Part shown: positions 26,455-29,790 of the stretch, piece by piece | Layout: each line of letters opens with the position of its first letter | How positions within the stretch are numbered: the stretch's first letter is position 1 | Assembly: GCF_963853765.1 (NCBI RefSeq) | Contig: NC_088856.1 | Location: forward strand, 12,276,001-12,340,000 | Reading direction: 5' to 3' | Length of the DNA: 64,000 bases | From: Magallana gigas | Lineage: Eukaryota | Translations under genes and position numbers: made by a program | Notes under the pieces: generated by a model | Databases searched by the model: none | Told to the model about the DNA's origin: nothing | The model's input: only the letters and a program-made list of their open reading frames with translations

Positions 26455-29400
26455 TTATTCTACATTTGTACTGTTTTGACCACCTGTAAAAACTATATCT
26501 TGTGTTTTGCCATCACTTTGTTTAATTGTTATCTTCTTATTATATAAGGAAGGAGGAATTCTAAACCAAGATGGTAGACCTTGAGCTGTAGTTGGATTTA
26601 TAATTAGACCTTGACTTTGTGGTTGAAGAACAGTGGGTTCAGTAGTTGGAACTAGCCTTAAAGGTGGATATGGTGCTACAGAGGGACCTGACCTTTGACC
26701 TTGGGAATCACTGGGTTCTTGTTCCATCTCTTGATTAATTTTTCCTATTAATTGATCTTTTTCTTGTTGAGATGGTTTGCTCAGTGGTTTTTTAGTTTTT
26801 CTCCCAGGATTTTTATTTGTTGACCTAAAACGAGGCTGTAACACATTTTTAGCTACTGATGACATTTTTTCTGTTTTCTTAAACTCTTTGAGAGAGTTTG
26901 GAAGTTTTTCACATCCATTATTGGCAGAAATGATGTGATCTAATGCTGTAATTATGTTATCTAGCCTATGTTGCTGAACTAAGGGGCTATTATTGACCTG
27001 AGACATAATTTCATTCAGCCTATCTTGTATACCTCTAATCTTCATAGACTGTGAGTTGCTGGAGGCATAAGAGTTTTCCTGTGATGGACTTGTGACCGTT
27101 TTGCTTGTCTGAATACAAGTTTCTGACTTATCATCTGATTCACATCTGTTTCTATCCCAAAAGAGTAATGATTGGACCTTATGAATATGTTTACATATGT
27201 TTCCTTCACCATAGTCAAAACAGTTACAAACAAGAATATGCTGACACAAATCTACACATGGTACCTTTTTACACTTAGAGTAACAATGTTTTTCAGAACA
27301 TTTTTTAGAATTTACAATAACTGTATATAAGCTGCCTTTTGACATAACTGAAAATGTGTTTTCATTAACTTGAGAAACTGAGGAATCTGAAATTTCAAAA
27401 CTACTCTTGTGTCTATCAGCTGTCTGAATATTTTCGTCTGAAGGGATGCTAAATTTGCTAGCGGCCAAATGCTTGAAATACAAGTTGTTCTCTATCTGTA
27501 ACAATGTTTCAAGAAGTATATCTATTCTACGATTTCGTTTCCCTTCAAAGTACACAGTTTTCAACTGATTATGAAAGCTTTCCAAAAACATGTTTGTATT
27601 TACCTTAGAATATTCACCAGTTCTAAAACACATTGCCCACTTTTCCTTTCTACACAAGTAAAAATCATTAATATATTTAAGAAAAGCCTGGTTTGTGCAC
27701 GATAATTTTTGCACTAAAATATCCAAGTATTTATCTAACAAAACTTTGGTTTTAGCATCCATTGCAGCACATAACAAACAATAAATTTCTGCTTGCTGTT
27801 CCCTATCTTTTATATCTTGTTGAATTTTAAGACGCCAGTTTTTGTGAATGTGCCAAATACACAGGTAATGTTGCAGATCTGGTCCAAAAACACTCTTAGC
27901 TGCATTCCACCCAGCAATATCATCATCTGTCATCAAAATGTTTACTTTTGTTTGTGGAGATTTTCTTTTTACTGCATTTAGAAATAAAGATATAGCCTGC
28001 TCATTTTCTTTGTTGGAAATACAAAATGCAACCGGATATCCATGTCTAAATTCATCAATAACCAAAAGTGTAATTAACTTGAATGAATATATATTGGTCT
28101 TATGGGTGGAATCCATGCAAAGAATCATGGGGGCAAATTTTTCATACATATCTAGTTGTTGTTTAGTCATAATAGCCAGCATGAAGTCTTCCTTACTAAG
28201 TCCAGTTGTCTCGTCATCTACATTTTGTTGTTTAAACACTAAAACAGGATTAAACTTTTCTCTCTGTAAAGCATCTACTCTCAAATAAGTAGATGTAGCA
28301 TCGTCACTATGTCTGATAACAGAAGGGTCAATTATTTTTTGCTTTAAGTTGTGAATTGTTTTTCTGTCAATCAAATGATAATGTTTCATGTCTGTCAAGT
28401 CGTCACGGTTGTTCCTGTCACTGAATTTCTCCCTAACCTTATCCAGAATTGTATTAATTGGAATTTTTAAGGCTAACATAGTTGTAATTTCTGACTTGAT
28501 ATGATCCGGAATTGGTAGATATTTACTTTCCTCAAAACTTGTCGAATGGGTATGAGATTTAATATATTTTACTTTAACTGTTCCCTCCCTGGTTATTAAA
28601 ACAGAAAATCTGGATAAACACACTCCATCTAGTTTGCAAGACCCCTTTTTATTCTCCCTTCTCTGTCTATCTTTGGAGTCATTAATACGTCTTTTGCCAT
28701 CCCTATGACAAACAAGAGTGTACCTTTGAGAACCATCCTTATTGAGGGTTTTTGGTCGGTGCAAAACATATCTTGTATTTTTATTCAAAGATTCATCAGC
28801 CAAAAATTTTTCAAAAGTATTTACATTTTCAAAATTTAGATTTTCAATTTCGATTTCTGCCTCATGAGAACTTATTAAATGGCCAACTAGATCATCAACA
28901 TGGAAAAATGATAAGTCACATGATGGAACAATGCATGACATTCTCCATTGATTTTCTTTTTCGTGCACATTCTTCACATGGCGGTTCAAGTTTGCCTTAT
29001 CATGAAAAGTTTTTTTGCAAATTCTACACATATTTTTGAAAGAATTTTTTTGGTTGTCATGTGGGATTTTGTCATAGGAATGAACTGTCTTTAGATAGTC
29101 TGTCTGTCTTGGCAATTCCGGTGTTTGATTAGTATTCGTCTCTTGTGTTTTAGTTTTCAAAGAATCTAAATCAAACTTTTTGCATGCTGAGGGGTCTAAA
29201 TTCCAATGATAAAAACTTTTTGCAGTTGAGGGCACAAATATTTCTTGATGGATAGGAATAGCCTCAGTCACGGTTTCATAATGTCCTCCCCCCGCTCTTG
29301 TCCAAACTAAATGAATCCTAGAAACTGAGTTGCTAAAGTCATGTTCTAATGTAACTATGTCTTGGTTGTCAACATCACCACCAACAGTAACTAAAACATT

Positions 29401-29790
29401 AATTCCTAATCTTCTAGATAAAGCCAATATTGACTCTTGTCCAGCAAATGTACCTAGTTGTCTAAGATTATTTAATTCCTGCTGAATTTCTGAATCCAAC
29501 ATTGAATTACCATTATCATGAAAAAAGAAATTTCTAAATAAGCCTAAATTTTGCTCAATCTCATTAATTGCAATATTTCTAAGCTCTTGGTGGTGATTTT
29601 GATTTCCAAAGAGTGCCAGACTAACAGACCGAAAAAGACAATTTCCGTCACCTATGATAGGTTGTCTATATAGTCCATAGGAAGCTAAATATTCGTCCTG
29701 TCGGGTTCTCTCTCGCTCAGAATTATCTACCACTTGCAAAATAACCTCATTATTATTAATACTACTAATTAGAGAGTCAGGATCCGAAAT
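26455..29790 (-). CDS. Main exon of an OTU-C2H2-MULE(DDE)-SWIM transposase
   Basis: OTU Cys box GDGNC34LFR and His box GGH153YE; two C2H2 fingers (CRICKKTF..LNRHVKNVH; CIVPSC..HLISSH); WRKY/GCM-like C..C..HTH; catalytic D (CMDSTH), D (MTDDD), CxxH (LCIWH), E (FLESFH); SWIM CNC..CKH. The listed start is TTG, the first ATG is residue 80, and the frame stays open to an acceptor TTATAG| at 29790, so the N-terminus must be spliced on. Confidence 0.92.
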   Translation of the reverse strand: MSDPDSLISSINNNEVILQVVDNSERERTRQDEYLASYGLYRQPIIGDGNCLFRSVSLALFGNQNHHQELRNIAINEIEQNLGLFRNFFFHDNGNSMLDSEIQQELNNLRQLGTFAGQESILALSRRLGINVLVTVGGDVDNQDIVTLEHDFSNSVSRIHLVWTRAGGGHYETVTEAIPIHQEIFVPSTAKSFYHWNLDPSACKKFDLDSLKTKTQETNTNQTPELPRQTDYLKTVHSYDKIPHDNQKNSFKNMCRICKKTFHDKANLNRHVKNVHEKENQWRMSCIVPSCDLSFFHVDDLVGHLISSHEAEIEIENLNFENVNTFEKFLADESLNKNTRYVLHRPKTLNKDGSQRYTLVCHRDGKRRINDSKDRQRRENKKGSCKLDGVCLSRFSVLITREGTVKVKYIKSHTHSTSFEESKYLPIPDHIKSEITTMLALKIPINTILDKVREKFSDRNNRDDLTDMKHYHLIDRKTIHNLKQKIIDPSVIRHSDDATSTYLRVDALQREKFNPVLVFKQQNVDDETTGLSKEDFMLAIMTKQQLDMYEKFAPMILCMDSTHKTNIYSFKLITLLVIDEFRHGYPVAFCISNKENEQAISLFLNAVKRKSPQTKVNILMTDDDIAGWNAAKSVFGPDLQHYLCIWHIHKNWRLKIQQDIKDREQQAEIYCLLCAAMDAKTKVLLDKYLDILVQKLSCTNQAFLKYINDFYLCRKEKWAMCFRTGEYSKVNTNMFLESFHNQLKTVYFEGKRNRRIDILLETLLQIENNLYFKHLAASKFSIPSDENIQTADRHKSSFEISDSSVSQVNENTFSVMSKGSLYTVIVNSKKCSEKHCYSKCKKVPCVDLCQHILVCNCFDYGEGNICKHIHKVQSLLFWDRNRCESDDKSETCIQTSKTVTSPSQENSYASSNSQSMKIRGIQDRLNEIMSQVNNSPLVQQHRLDNIITALDHIISANNGCEKLPNSLKEFKKTEKMSSVAKNVLQPRFRSTNKNPGRKTKKPLSKPSQQEKDQLIGKINQEMEQEPSDSQGQRSGPSVAPYPPLRLVPTTEPTVLQPQSQGLIINPTTAQGLPSWFRIPPSLYNKKITIKQSDGKTQDIVFTGGQNSTNVE

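What the first reader, a model, noticed from the sequence alone, without database searches (positions are those of the whole stretch)
26455..29790. Giant intact MULE whose transposase carries an OTU deubiquitinase-like domain
One reading frame joins an OTU protease fold with apparently intact catalytic residues (D31, C34, H153, then E155) to two C2H2 fingers, the MULE DDE core and a SWIM finger, inside a 15.8-kb element with perfect TIRs and TSD. Protease cargo is known in other MULEs (Ulp1 in plant Kaonashi elements; OTU/Ulp1 reported in some fungal and other transposons). An animal transposase with its own deubiquitinase could resist ubiquitin-mediated degradation or edit chromatin ubiquitin at target sites (inference).
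Basis: partly seen in the sequence, partly recalled or inferred. Interest (0 to 1): 0.8.

Follow-up and report, generated by a model that had tools for sequence, protein, structure and literature searches.

The report
Oyster Mutator transposon with OTU deubiquitinase
This is a young, apparently intact 15.8-kb Mutator-like DNA transposon in an oyster genome. Its transposase has an OTUD1-like deubiquitinase domain fused to its front end, a combination noted before in other transposons but never tested, and this copy would suit such a test.

Summary
One open frame on the minus strand (26455-29790) encodes an OTU protease domain, two C2H2 fingers, a WRKY/GCM1-like finger, the MULE DDE core and a SWIM-like CxCxnCxH motif. 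It lies in a 15,838-bp element (22443-38280) with perfect 32-bp TIRs and a 9-bp TSD (CAAAATTTT).

The OTU part models as an OTU fold closest to human OTUD1. Its Asp/Cys/His/acidic residues are conserved in relatives down to 33% identity, it is under purifying selection (dN/dS 0.05-0.23), and it is predicted to hold ubiquitin's tail in the catalytic cleft.

The genome has about 10-12 copies that are 98.5-99% alike. Three are full-length with different TSDs, and two of those have an intact frame. There are also deletion derivatives and older OTU-bearing subfamilies. Relatives occur in Saccostrea, Ostrea and C. virginica.

Three corrections:
- No ATG precedes the catalytic Cys in the frame. A 17-codon exon 1 next to the 5' TIR most likely supplies the start.
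- The large size comes from a 5.7-kb non-coding block in intron 1, nested MITEs and a tripled 5' end, not from extra genes.
- OTU-MULE fusions were already noted in Medicago and Hydra.

RNA data showed no spliced mRNA. Verdict: a new member of a known kind, of moderate interest.

The parts
22443..38280 (-). Whole MULE element, 15,838 bp, with the transposase gene on the minus strand
   Evidence: Perfect 32-bp TIRs and a 9-bp TSD. Colinear at 98.5-99% with two other full-length copies of 12,970 and 14,480 bp.
22434..22442 (.). Target-site duplication, left copy (CAAAATTTT)
   Evidence: Identical to 38281-38289.
38281..38289 (.). Target-site duplication, right copy (CAAAATTTT)
22443..22474 (+). 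TIR at the 3' end of the gene (GAATCTTACTATCTGCAACCTTAGGACTAGGC)
38249..38280 (-). Outermost TIR at the 5' end of the gene. Identical internal copies lie at 37032-37063 and 35812-35843.
34624..38280 (-). Tandem triplication of the 5'-terminal 1.22 kb (1220, 1220 and 1217 bp). Each unit carries a TIR and a copy of exon 1. The units are identical except for one 3-nt indel, and only this copy has the triplication.
38146..38196 (-). Candidate exon 1 coding part, MAPAMKLQRFEVMIFLM, followed by the donor GTTAGT, phase 0. Identical copies lie at 36929-36979 and 35709-35759.
   Evidence: Sequence. Same length and pattern as the N-terminus of the Saccostrea gene model P0002. An equivalent ATGGCG... exon with a GTAAGT donor lies next to the O. 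edulis TIR. The older copy on C3 has this exon about 230 nt upstream of the ORF. No RNA proof.
29791..35708 (-). Inferred intron 1, counted from the innermost exon-1 copy. The acceptor is ttttattatAG|ATTTCG at 29791/29790.
   Evidence: The acceptor and the in-frame 'ISD/ISE...' coding are conserved in O. edulis, a Logan contig and Saccostrea.
29920..35602 (-). 5.7-kb non-coding block inside intron 1. It is present in all young copies and absent from the older 84%-identical copy on C3. It is specific to this family apart from nested repeats.
   Evidence: No ORF of 100 aa or more, and the only ORFs of 60 aa or more are 60 and 71 aa. None of these was run against Pfam.
26455..29790 (-). Main coding exon: 1111 codons plus TAA. 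Joined to exon 1 it predicts a 1128-aa protein.
29215..29688 (-). OTU cysteine-protease (deubiquitinase-like) domain. Codons: D31 at 29647-29649, C34 at 29638-29640, H153 at 29281-29283, E155 at 29275-29277.
   Evidence: Pfam; phmmer to OTUD1 4bop, E 7.5e-17; AF2 model with mean pLDDT 81; Foldseek to 4bop, TMt 0.85; invariant residues; dN/dS 0.05-0.23.
28864..29028 (-). Two C2H2 zinc fingers (C238/C241/H254/H259 and C269/C274/H287/H292)
   Evidence: Pfam hit just under threshold for the first finger. All eight ligands are invariant in 9 homologues.
28546..28710 (-). WRKY/GCM1-like zinc finger of MULE transposases (C344...C368/C374...H396-x-H398). Assigned by motif only.
   Evidence: Invariant Cys/His residues. 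[quoted passage not shown] Not tested with a profile.
27580..28113 (-). MULE DDE catalytic core: D543, D605/D607, C627-x2-H630, E720
   Evidence: Pfam MULE and ZSWIM1-3 RNaseH-like. Residues invariant. dN/dS 0.04-0.07.
27187..27228 (-). SWIM-like CxCxnCxH motif (C838, C840, C849, H851)
   Evidence: Invariant in 9 homologues. Pfam SWIM gave no hit at E<=1.
31315..31856 (.). Nested MITE-like repeat of about 540 bp, with more than 30 copies at 95-97% elsewhere in the genome
30966..31293 (.). Nested very-high-copy repeat. It forms an inverted pair with 20254-20582 outside the element and has very high depth in the RNA libraries.
24157..24584 (.). 428-bp insertion in the 3' non-coding part, private to this copy

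Best explanation
The element is an autonomous, recently mobile Mutator-like element (MULE) of an ostreid oyster. Its single gene most likely has two coding exons. A 17-codon exon 1 sits about 85 nt inside the 5' TIR. A 3.3-kb exon 2 encodes, in order: an OTUD1-like OTU cysteine protease, two C2H2 fingers, a WRKY/GCM1-like finger, the MULE DDE core and a SWIM-like finger.

The DDE part cuts and pastes the element through its 32-bp TIRs and makes 9-bp TSDs. That is shown by the anatomy of several copies.

The OTU part is most likely an active deubiquitinase carried in cis by the transposase. This is an inference from the fold, the complete and conserved catalytic set, purifying selection and a predicted ubiquitin-tail-in-cleft complex. 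It was acquired once in one clade of animal C2H2-WRKY-MULE transposases and has been kept since.

Its likely benefit to the element is to remove ubiquitin, possibly K63-type chains as for its nearest solved relative OTUD1. The target could be the transposase itself or chromatin and repair factors at the excision or insertion site. This last step is speculation.

The large size is non-coding: a 5.7-kb block that entered intron 1 in the ancestor of the young subfamily, nested MITEs, and in this copy a tandem triplication of the 5' terminal 1.22 kb.
For: - Domains and invariant residues.
- TIRs and TSDs in the window and in two further full-length copies with different TSDs.
- About 10-12 copies at 98.5-99% identity, two with intact frames, plus deletion derivatives of 2.7 kb (C6) and on C10.
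- Older OTU-bearing subfamilies at 44-58% aa identity in the same genome.
- OTU+MULE homologues in Saccostrea, Ostrea and C. virginica, and unnamed ones down to 33% identity.
- O. edulis copy with 48-bp TIRs and a 9-bp TSD.
- OTU fold: phmmer to OTUD1 4bop E 7.5e-17; AF2 mean pLDDT 81.2; Foldseek top hit 4bop, E 5.8e-14, TMt 0.85, followed by OTUD3, OTUD5, Otu2 and viral OTUs.
- Purifying selection on the OTU: dN/dS 0.09, 0.05 and 0.23 in three pairs, against 0.04-0.07 for the DDE core.
- Ubiquitin docking: score 0.85 against a best control of 0.50. This mark was reached by 51 of 78 solved complexes and 2 of 108 mismatched pairs. The runs agree in at least 96% of contacts and the partner's pLDDT is at least 91. 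Ub residues 70-76 contact the D-G-N-C loop and the GGHY His loop.
- Single origin: all 10 OTU rows fall in one group with SH-aLRT 97. Only about 5 of the 150 best 50%-representatives carry an OTU.
- Exon 1: in-frame phase-0 GT...AG junction; the 17-aa N-terminus of the Saccostrea model matches in length and pattern; O. edulis has an equivalent exon; the ancestral short intron of about 230 nt is visible in the C3 copy.
Against: - No catalytic activity has been measured.
- The ubiquitin-complex pass may reflect the model's memory of solved OTU-Ub complexes.
- The exon-1 splice has no RNA support. In about 1% samples of two polyA RNA-seq runs, depth over the ORF is only about 1-9x in both read orientations. 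There is no drop at 29790, and no joint or loose end was listed there, although not all rows were shown.
- Contigs from RNA libraries run unspliced across the acceptor to 29842-30130, at depths similar to the flanks. DNA carry-over or unspliced read-through therefore cannot be excluded.
- In this subfamily the ATG that O. edulis has just before the OTU is GTG. If exon 1 is not used, translation from the first in-frame ATG would lack Cys34.
- Transposition activity is inferred from copy anatomy and was not observed.
Confidence: 0.72

Rival explanations
1. The OTU domain is a processing protease rather than a deubiquitinase acting on host targets. It would cleave the transposon-encoded polyprotein, releasing itself or the C-terminal tail, as some viral OTU or papain-like proteases do and as was suggested for the Medicago OTU-MULE fusions.
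For: Babu et al. 2006 proposed this for Medicago MULE-OTU fusions (PMC1702500). The domain is fused in cis. A conserved '...FTGGQ' motif near the C-terminus of the closest relatives resembles a Gly-Gly site.
Against: The nearest relatives by sequence and fold are cellular DUBs (OTUD1, OTUD3, OTUD5, Otu2), not processing proteases. The predicted complex places free ubiquitin's tail in the cleft. The C-terminal GG is not conserved in the more distant family members P0005, P0014 and P0015. No conserved GG site lies in the linker after the OTU.
Confidence: 0.1
2. The OTU domain is translated rarely or not at all in this subfamily. The functional product would start at an internal Met downstream of Cys34, so the OTU here would be a decaying relic of the ancestral fusion.
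For: The exon-2 frame has no ATG before Cys34. The ATG present in O. edulis is GTG here. No spliced reads were seen. Contigs from RNA libraries are unspliced across the acceptor.
Against: The catalytic residues are intact, and the frame is open through the OTU part in all the young copies that retain it. The frame stays open for 17 further codons upstream, to a strong acceptor conserved in three other lineages. An in-phase ATG exon with a consensus donor sits at the conserved position beside the TIR. dN/dS of the OTU between lineages is 0.05-0.23. The copies are too young for decay to be visible either way.
Confidence: 0.12
3. The locus is a domesticated host gene (an OTU-ZSWIM-like fusion) and not a mobile element.
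For: NCBI annotates the relatives as ordinary 'uncharacterized protein LOC...' genes. Pfam's ZSWIM1-3 RNaseH-like family, built on domesticated vertebrate genes, matches.
Against: There are perfect TIRs and 9-bp TSDs at three different insertion sites in this genome and one in O. edulis. There are about 10-12 near-identical dispersed copies, internally deleted derivatives that keep both ends, and decayed older copies.
Confidence: 0.02

Closest known systems
Hydra MuDR-6_HM (Repbase), listed with an 'Ovarian Tumour Gene' feature in Dupeyron et al. 2019 (PMC6446971)
   Same: An animal Mutator-superfamily element whose coding capacity includes an OTU domain.
   Different: It is from a different phylum and a different MULE group in that paper's tree (group 14; mollusc groups are 15 and 19). 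No TIRs or TSD were reported there. I could not obtain its sequence, so domain order and homology of the OTU are untested. It did not appear among the 150 best profile hits.
Medicago truncatula MULE transposases with an OTU-superfamily protease (Babu et al. 2006, PMC1702500)
   Same: A WRKY-GCM1 / MULE / SWIM-type transposase fused in one protein to an OTU papain-like protease.
   Different: The fusion in the plant is C-terminal. Here it is N-terminal, in the animal subgroup that has two classic C2H2 fingers before the WRKY-like finger. This is probably an independent acquisition (inference).
Kaonashi / KI-MULEs and other Ulp1-carrying MULEs (Arabidopsis, melon, rice, maize, hydra, lancelet; Hoen et al. 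2006, as cited in PMC2836005)
   Same: MULEs that carry a cysteine protease of the ubiquitin-like-modifier system, with a suspected role in transposition or silencing evasion.
   Different: Those carry Ulp1 (SUMO protease, clan CE), often as a separate or captured gene. Here it is an OTU (ubiquitin, clan CA) fused to the transposase.
Ginger1 transposons and animal/fungal Helentrons with OTU domains (Bao et al. 2010, PMC2836005; Arkhipova & Yushenova 2019, PMC6431247)
   Same: An OTU domain fused to the transposition protein of a DNA transposon, in invertebrates including a mollusc (Aplysia Ginger1).
   Different: Those use a different transposition enzyme: a retroviral-type integrase or Rep/helicase. 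The OTU is C-terminal in Ginger1.
Human OTUD1 OTU domain (PDB 4bop)
   Same: It is the best sequence and fold match: 30% identity, TMt 0.85. It shares the DGNCL[FY]R Cys loop and the GHY[ED] His loop.
   Different: OTUD1 is a cellular DUB with a UIM and no transposase. Linkage specificity of the transposon domain is unknown.

Membership tests
Mutator/MULE superfamily of DNA transposons | MULE-type DDE transposase domain | tested here: met
   PF10551, E 2.3e-16, 60.5 bits against a cut-off of 27.6. D543, D605/D607, E720 and the C627-x2-H630 motif are invariant.
Mutator/MULE superfamily of DNA transposons | Terminal inverted repeats | tested here: met
   32-bp perfect TIRs. The same TIRs bound the other copies.
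Mutator/MULE superfamily of DNA transposons | Target-site duplication of about 9 bp (8-11) | tested here: met
   9-bp TSDs: CAAAATTTT, TTTGATTTT and AAAAAAAAT in this genome, and GAAAAGAAG in O. edulis.
Mutator/MULE superfamily of DNA transposons | Evidence of mobility (dispersed copies, non-autonomous derivatives) | tested here: met
   About 10-12 copies at 98.5-99% identity on chromosomes C2, C4, C6, C8 and C10, plus deletion derivatives. Actual transposition was not observed.
OTU deubiquitinases (Pfam PF02338, MEROPS C85-like) | OTU fold | tested here: met
   AF2 model with pLDDT 81. The 50 listed Foldseek PDB hits are almost all OTU-domain proteins, and the best is OTUD1 with TMt 0.85.
OTU deubiquitinases (Pfam PF02338, MEROPS C85-like) | Catalytic Cys in the D-G-x-C loop, and His followed two residues later by an acidic residue | tested here: met
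   D31, C34 and H153 are invariant. Position 155 is E or D.
OTU deubiquitinases (Pfam PF02338, MEROPS C85-like) | Binds ubiquitin with its C-terminal tail in the active-site cleft | tested here: inconclusive
   Predicted complex scores 0.85 against a best control of 0.50 (mark reached by 51 of 78 solved complexes and 2 of 108 mismatched pairs). Ub 70-76 contacts the Cys and His loops. This is a prediction and may reflect memory of solved OTU-Ub complexes.
OTU deubiquitinases (Pfam PF02338, MEROPS C85-like) | Isopeptidase activity on ubiquitin conjugates | not testable with these tools
   Needs Ub-AMC or di-ubiquitin assays with a C34A control.
SWIM zinc finger (PF04434) | CxCxnCxH signature recognised by the family profile | tested here: inconclusive
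   The motif C838-x-C840...C849-x-H851 is present and invariant, but Pfam SWIM gave no hit at E<=1.
Pack-MULE / gene-capturing MULE | Internal region carries recognisable host gene fragments | tested here: not met
   Outside the transposase, the element has no ORF of 100 aa or more on its coding strand. The only other one, 116 aa at 27938-28288, lies antisense inside the transposase ORF. The remaining ORFs are all under 100 aa. None of these ORFs was run against Pfam. The 5.7-kb block matches only copies of this family plus nested MITEs. Short or decayed gene fragments were not excluded.

The most novel reading that the evidence does not exclude
The OTU is a working, linkage-specific deubiquitinase that the transposase needs. 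It might shield the transposase from ubiquitin-dependent turnover, or strip K63/H2A-type ubiquitin marks at the break so that repair or host silencing is diverted. If so, this young oyster family would be the first experimentally tractable animal cut-and-paste transposon that manipulates host ubiquitin signalling. The tandemly multiplied 5' end, with three TIRs and three promoter/exon-1 units, might add a dosage or alternative-end mechanism.
Probability: 0.3. Interest if true: 0.7.

Novelty: new member of a known kind. Interest (0 to 1): 0.45.

Why it matters
Proteases of the ubiquitin and SUMO systems recur in unrelated transposon superfamilies: Ulp1 in MULEs and Ginger1, OTU in Ginger1, Helentrons and some MULEs. 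None of the papers found in the searches here reported an experimental test of what they do for the element.

This oyster family is a clean case for such a test:
- It has intact, nearly identical copies with defined ends.
- The OTU is close enough to OTUD1 to guide assays and mutants.
- The OTU shows clear purifying selection, and OTU-less relatives are available for comparison.

The finding also gives a practical annotation point. The related oyster 'uncharacterized protein LOC...' gene models are transposase genes, and at least the O. edulis model probably lacks a short 5' exon next to the TIR.

Tried and rejected
- RNA evidence for the exon-1 splice and for expression. Two polyA raw-read runs (about 1% sampled) and two sets of RNA-library contigs were laid on 26200-32199. 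There was low depth in both orientations over the ORF, no joint or loose end listed at 29790, and flat contig depth across ORF and flanks. The result is inconclusive.
- Logan contigs carrying the protein are all colinear with the genome and unspliced. They end at 26352 because of a copy variant, and this is not evidence for a poly(A) site.
- tblastn with the Saccostrea N-terminus was too short to find exon 1. I found it by eye, then checked it against the O. edulis and C3 copies.
- The look-up of encoding contigs for the Saccostrea model P0002 found nothing on record.
- The 20-nt and 30-nt 'mini-introns' just upstream of 29790, which could link the nearby ATG at about 29832, were rejected. The 20-nt one is out of frame. 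The 30-nt one is implausibly short, and the acceptor is better explained by the conserved distant exon 1.
- Second gene or captured genes in the 12 kb of non-ORF sequence: none found.
- Word-based homologue searches, both single sequence and profile, gave the same roughly 25 proteins. The exhaustive profile search gave breadth but no taxonomy.
- The only name found for the distant OTU-MULE representatives was a 'Sedimenticola sp.' MAG, probably mis-binned host DNA. The range of the family beyond oysters therefore stays open.
- Earlier findings of this scan: nothing near the place or under the search words.
- Repbase could not be consulted, so I cannot say whether this exact family is deposited there.

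
Full report
**What is there**

On the minus strand, a frame is open from 29790 down to a TAA at 26455-26457. That is 1111 codons, closed upstream by a TAG at 29791-29793.
- OTU at residues 30-122 (E 8.7e-10, above the gathering score);
- one C2H2 finger at 237-259, just under threshold;
- MULE at 539-634 (E 2.3e-16);
- ZSWIM1-3 RNaseH-like.

An alignment with eight homologues that share 33-99% identity shows many invariant residues:
- OTU residues D31, G32, N33, C34 and H153;
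- both C2H2 fingers (C238/C241/H254/H259 and C269/C274/H287/H292);
- a WRKY/GCM1-like Cys/His set (C344, C368/C374, H396, H398);
- the DDE residues D543, D605/D607 and E720, with the C627-x2-H630 motif;
- a SWIM-like C838-x-C840...C849-x-H851.

Pfam's SWIM model itself did not hit, so that finger rests on the motif alone.

**The element**

The gene lies in a 15,838-bp element (22443-38280). It is bounded by perfect 32-bp TIRs and a perfect 9-bp TSD, CAAAATTTT.

**It is a mobile family, not a one-off**

The window comes from a 564-Mb genome, chromosome C4. I infer an ostreid oyster because the nearest named homologues are from Saccostrea, Ostrea and Crassostrea virginica, and because RNA runs holding the sequence are labelled 'oyster metagenome'.

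A six-frame search of the genome finds three full-length copies at 99% aa identity: the window copy, C4:29.22 Mb and C4:32.40 Mb. The first two have no stop and the third has one TAG. There are also several copies with internal deletions or insertions, and many older copies at 44-58% identity. At least five of those older lineages still start with the OTU part.

The two other full-length copies have the same TIRs, one with a single mismatch. Their perfect 9-bp TSDs differ (TTTGATTTT and AAAAAAAAT), and their lengths are 14,480 and 12,970 bp. The 5' end occurs at about 12 sites and the ORF start at about 10. Deletion derivatives that keep both ends exist, for example 2.7 kb on C6. Copies differ by 1-1.5% at the DNA level. 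This is the anatomy of a recently active autonomous MULE.

**Where the protein starts**

The open frame has no ATG before the catalytic Cys. The first Met is residue 84.

In Ostrea edulis and a related Logan contig, an ATG sits just before the OTU. In this subfamily that codon is GTG. In all lineages the frame stays open for 17-19 more codons (ISDPDSL... / ISETDSV...), up to a strong acceptor, ttttattatAG|ATTTCG.

Eighty-five nt inside the 5' TIR there is an ATG followed by 17 codons (MAPAMKLQRFEVMIFLM) and a consensus donor, GTTAGT. It is in phase 0, so joining it to 29790 gives an uninterrupted 1128-aa protein. Three lines support this exon 1:
- The Saccostrea cucullata gene model P0002 begins with a 17-residue stretch of the same pattern, MASRTDAGIFTEMFFLL.
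- The O. edulis element has ATGGCG... (MARSLTVFF) followed by GTAAGT at the equivalent place beside its TIR.
- An older, decayed copy on C3 (84% nt identity) has the exon-1 region only about 230 nt upstream of the ORF.

I therefore take exon 1 as the likely start. This is an inference, not a demonstration.

**RNA evidence is inconclusive**

About 1% samples of two polyA RNA-seq runs give 1-9x depth over the ORF in both read orientations. There is no step at 29790, and no joint was listed there. Contigs from two RNA libraries cover OTU and transposase colinearly (26352-29842), but at depths like the flanks. They also run unspliced past the acceptor, so DNA carry-over or unspliced read-through cannot be excluded.

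**Why it is 'giant'**

The base element is about 13 kb (copy 3). The C3 copy shows that 5.7 kb (window 29920-35602) entered intron 1 in the ancestor of the young subfamily. That block occurs only in copies of this family, except for nested repeats. One of these is a 540-bp MITE-like unit at 31315-31856 with more than 30 copies elsewhere.

The window copy also has a private 428-bp insertion at 24157-24584. In addition, its 5'-terminal 1.22 kb is tandemly triplicated (34624-38280). The three units are identical but for one 3-nt indel, and each carries a TIR and exon 1. The TSD flanks the outermost unit.

On the coding strand there is no ORF of 100 aa or more outside the transposase. The only other one, 116 aa at 27938-28288, lies antisense inside the transposase ORF. 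The size is therefore non-coding cargo, not extra genes.

**The OTU domain**

- By sequence it is closest to human OTUD1 (4bop, E 7.5e-17, aligned over the whole domain), then OTUD3 and OTUD5.
- An AlphaFold2 model built on 15 family sequences has mean pLDDT 81.2, and 85-96 across the core.
- Foldseek against the PDB returns almost only OTU domains. The best is OTUD1 (E 5.8e-14, TMt 0.85, 30% identity), followed by OTUD3, DUBA/OTUD5, yeast Otu2, and viral and Wolbachia OTUs.
- The Cys loop DGNCLFR and the His loop GGGHYE match OTUD1's DGNCLYR and GHYD.
- Codon comparisons among the window copy, the O. edulis copy and a related contig give dN/dS of 0.09, 0.05 and 0.23 for the OTU. The DDE core gives 0.04-0.07 and the linker and C-terminus give about 0.2. 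dS is saturated in the two distant pairs. The OTU is therefore maintained by selection as part of the element's protein.
- A complex prediction with the oyster's own ubiquitin scored 0.85 against a best control of 0.50. That mark was reached by 51 of 78 solved complexes and 2 of 108 mismatched pairs. The runs agree in at least 96% of contacts, and the partner's pLDDT is at least 91. Ubiquitin residues 70-76 lie against the Cys and His loops. Because OTU-ubiquitin complexes have been solved, this shows likeness rather than proof of binding.

**Evolutionary placement**

An exhaustive profile search of 1.84 billion representatives finds 1197 proteins at E<=1e-30. Most align only from about profile position 250 onward, so they start at the zinc-finger and transposase part and lack the OTU.

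Among the listed 150, only P0010, P0019, P0039, P0044 and P0046 match an HMM of this OTU. Pfam confirms OTU+MULE in P0044 and P0046.

In a tree of the transposase core, all ten OTU-bearing rows fall in one group of twelve (SH-aLRT 97). The other two rows have shorter N-termini and may be truncated gene calls. One acquisition followed by retention is the simplest reading.

I could not establish the host range of the distant members. One sits in a MAG labelled 'Sedimenticola sp.', which is probably mis-binned animal DNA.

**Comparison with what is known**

- Babu et al. 2006 reported Medicago MULE transposases with a C-terminal OTU-superfamily protease. They also described an animal subgroup with two classic zinc fingers before the WRKY-GCM1 domain, which is the architecture seen here (PMC1702500).
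- Dupeyron et al. 2019 list Hydra MuDR-6_HM with an 'Ovarian Tumour Gene' feature. Their mollusc MULE groups carry no such note (PMC6446971).
- Bao et al. 2010 describe OTU or Ulp1 domains in Ginger1, Ulp1 in MULEs of hydra, lancelet and plants, and OTU in animal Helitron-type elements. They speculate on a link to ubiquitin-dependent DNA repair (PMC2836005).
- Helentron OTUs are also noted in PMC6431247.

I found no paper that describes this oyster family or tests any transposon OTU. Repbase could not be checked. The finding is therefore a new, well-preserved member of a known kind, not a new kind.

**Mechanism, with status of each step**

Shown by sequence anatomy:
- cut-and-paste MULE with 32-bp TIRs and 9-bp TSDs;
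- recent mobility;
- OTU fold with a complete catalytic set, fused to the transposase;
- selection on the OTU.

Inferred:
- exon-1 start and splicing;
- deubiquitinase activity;
- single acquisition.

Speculative:
- what the DUB does for the element. The options are self-protection from degradation, editing of ubiquitin marks on chromatin or repair factors at the break, and interference with silencing.

Rivals:
- processing protease (0.10);
- OTU not translated in this subfamily (0.12);
- domesticated host gene (0.02, contradicted by the TIRs, TSDs and copies).

Noticed in passing
window 34624-38280: The 5'-terminal 1.22 kb of the element, with TIR, putative promoter and exon 1, is present three times in tandem (1220, 1220 and 1217 bp). 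The units are identical but for one 3-nt indel, and the TSD lies outside the outermost unit. No other copy in the genome has this. It could be a very recent slippage or aberrant-transposition product, or an assembly artefact.
   Followed up: partly
window 31315-31856: A nested MITE-like repeat of about 540 bp with internal inverted ends. More than 30 copies at 95-97% identity lie on all chromosomes.
   Followed up: partly
window 30966-31293 and 20254-20582: Two inverted copies of a very-high-copy repeat of about 330 bp (92-95% alike), one inside and one outside the MULE. Depth in RNA libraries is 100-1000 times that of the surroundings. Similar spikes occur at 30000-30200 and 32000-32199.
   Followed up: no
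window 32282-32684: A tandem repeat of a 177-bp unit, 2.3 copies at 79% match, inside the 5.7-kb intron block.
   Followed up: no
window 16981-18405: A dense array of inverted and direct repeats of about 100-190 nt (73-93% alike). It looks like a palindromic satellite or foldback structure upstream of the MULE.
   Followed up: no
G000 C4:54870490-54904885 and C8:11059316-11086219: At two loci, two copies of the MULE lie head-to-head as near-identical inverted pairs. The C8 pair shares an in-frame deletion of residues ~361-424. This suggests inverted segmental duplication or an aberrant transposition event.
   Followed up: no
L038 (Ostrea edulis OX387708.1) 7679-18250: A related 10,572-bp MULE with 48-bp TIRs and the TSD GAAAAGAAG. 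Its NCBI gene model (LOC125651055) starts at an internal ATG and probably misses a 9-codon exon 1 next to the TIR.
   Followed up: partly
P0191 (NCBI MES9884660.1): An OTU-MULE transposase of this animal clade is deposited as a protein of a 'Sedimenticola sp.' MAG on a 7.1-kb contig. This is most likely host (invertebrate) DNA mis-binned into a bacterial MAG.
   Followed up: no
window 26458-26580 (C-terminus of the protein): The C-terminal ~40 residues (GLPSW.RIPPSLY...ITI.QSDGK.Q.I.FTGGQ) and the 'GPSVAPYPPLRLV' motif upstream of them are strongly conserved in close and mid-distance relatives. They match no Pfam family, and their function is unknown.
   Followed up: no
window 56914-57104: A run of 191 N, either an assembly gap or masked sequence. 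I left it untouched.
   Followed up: no
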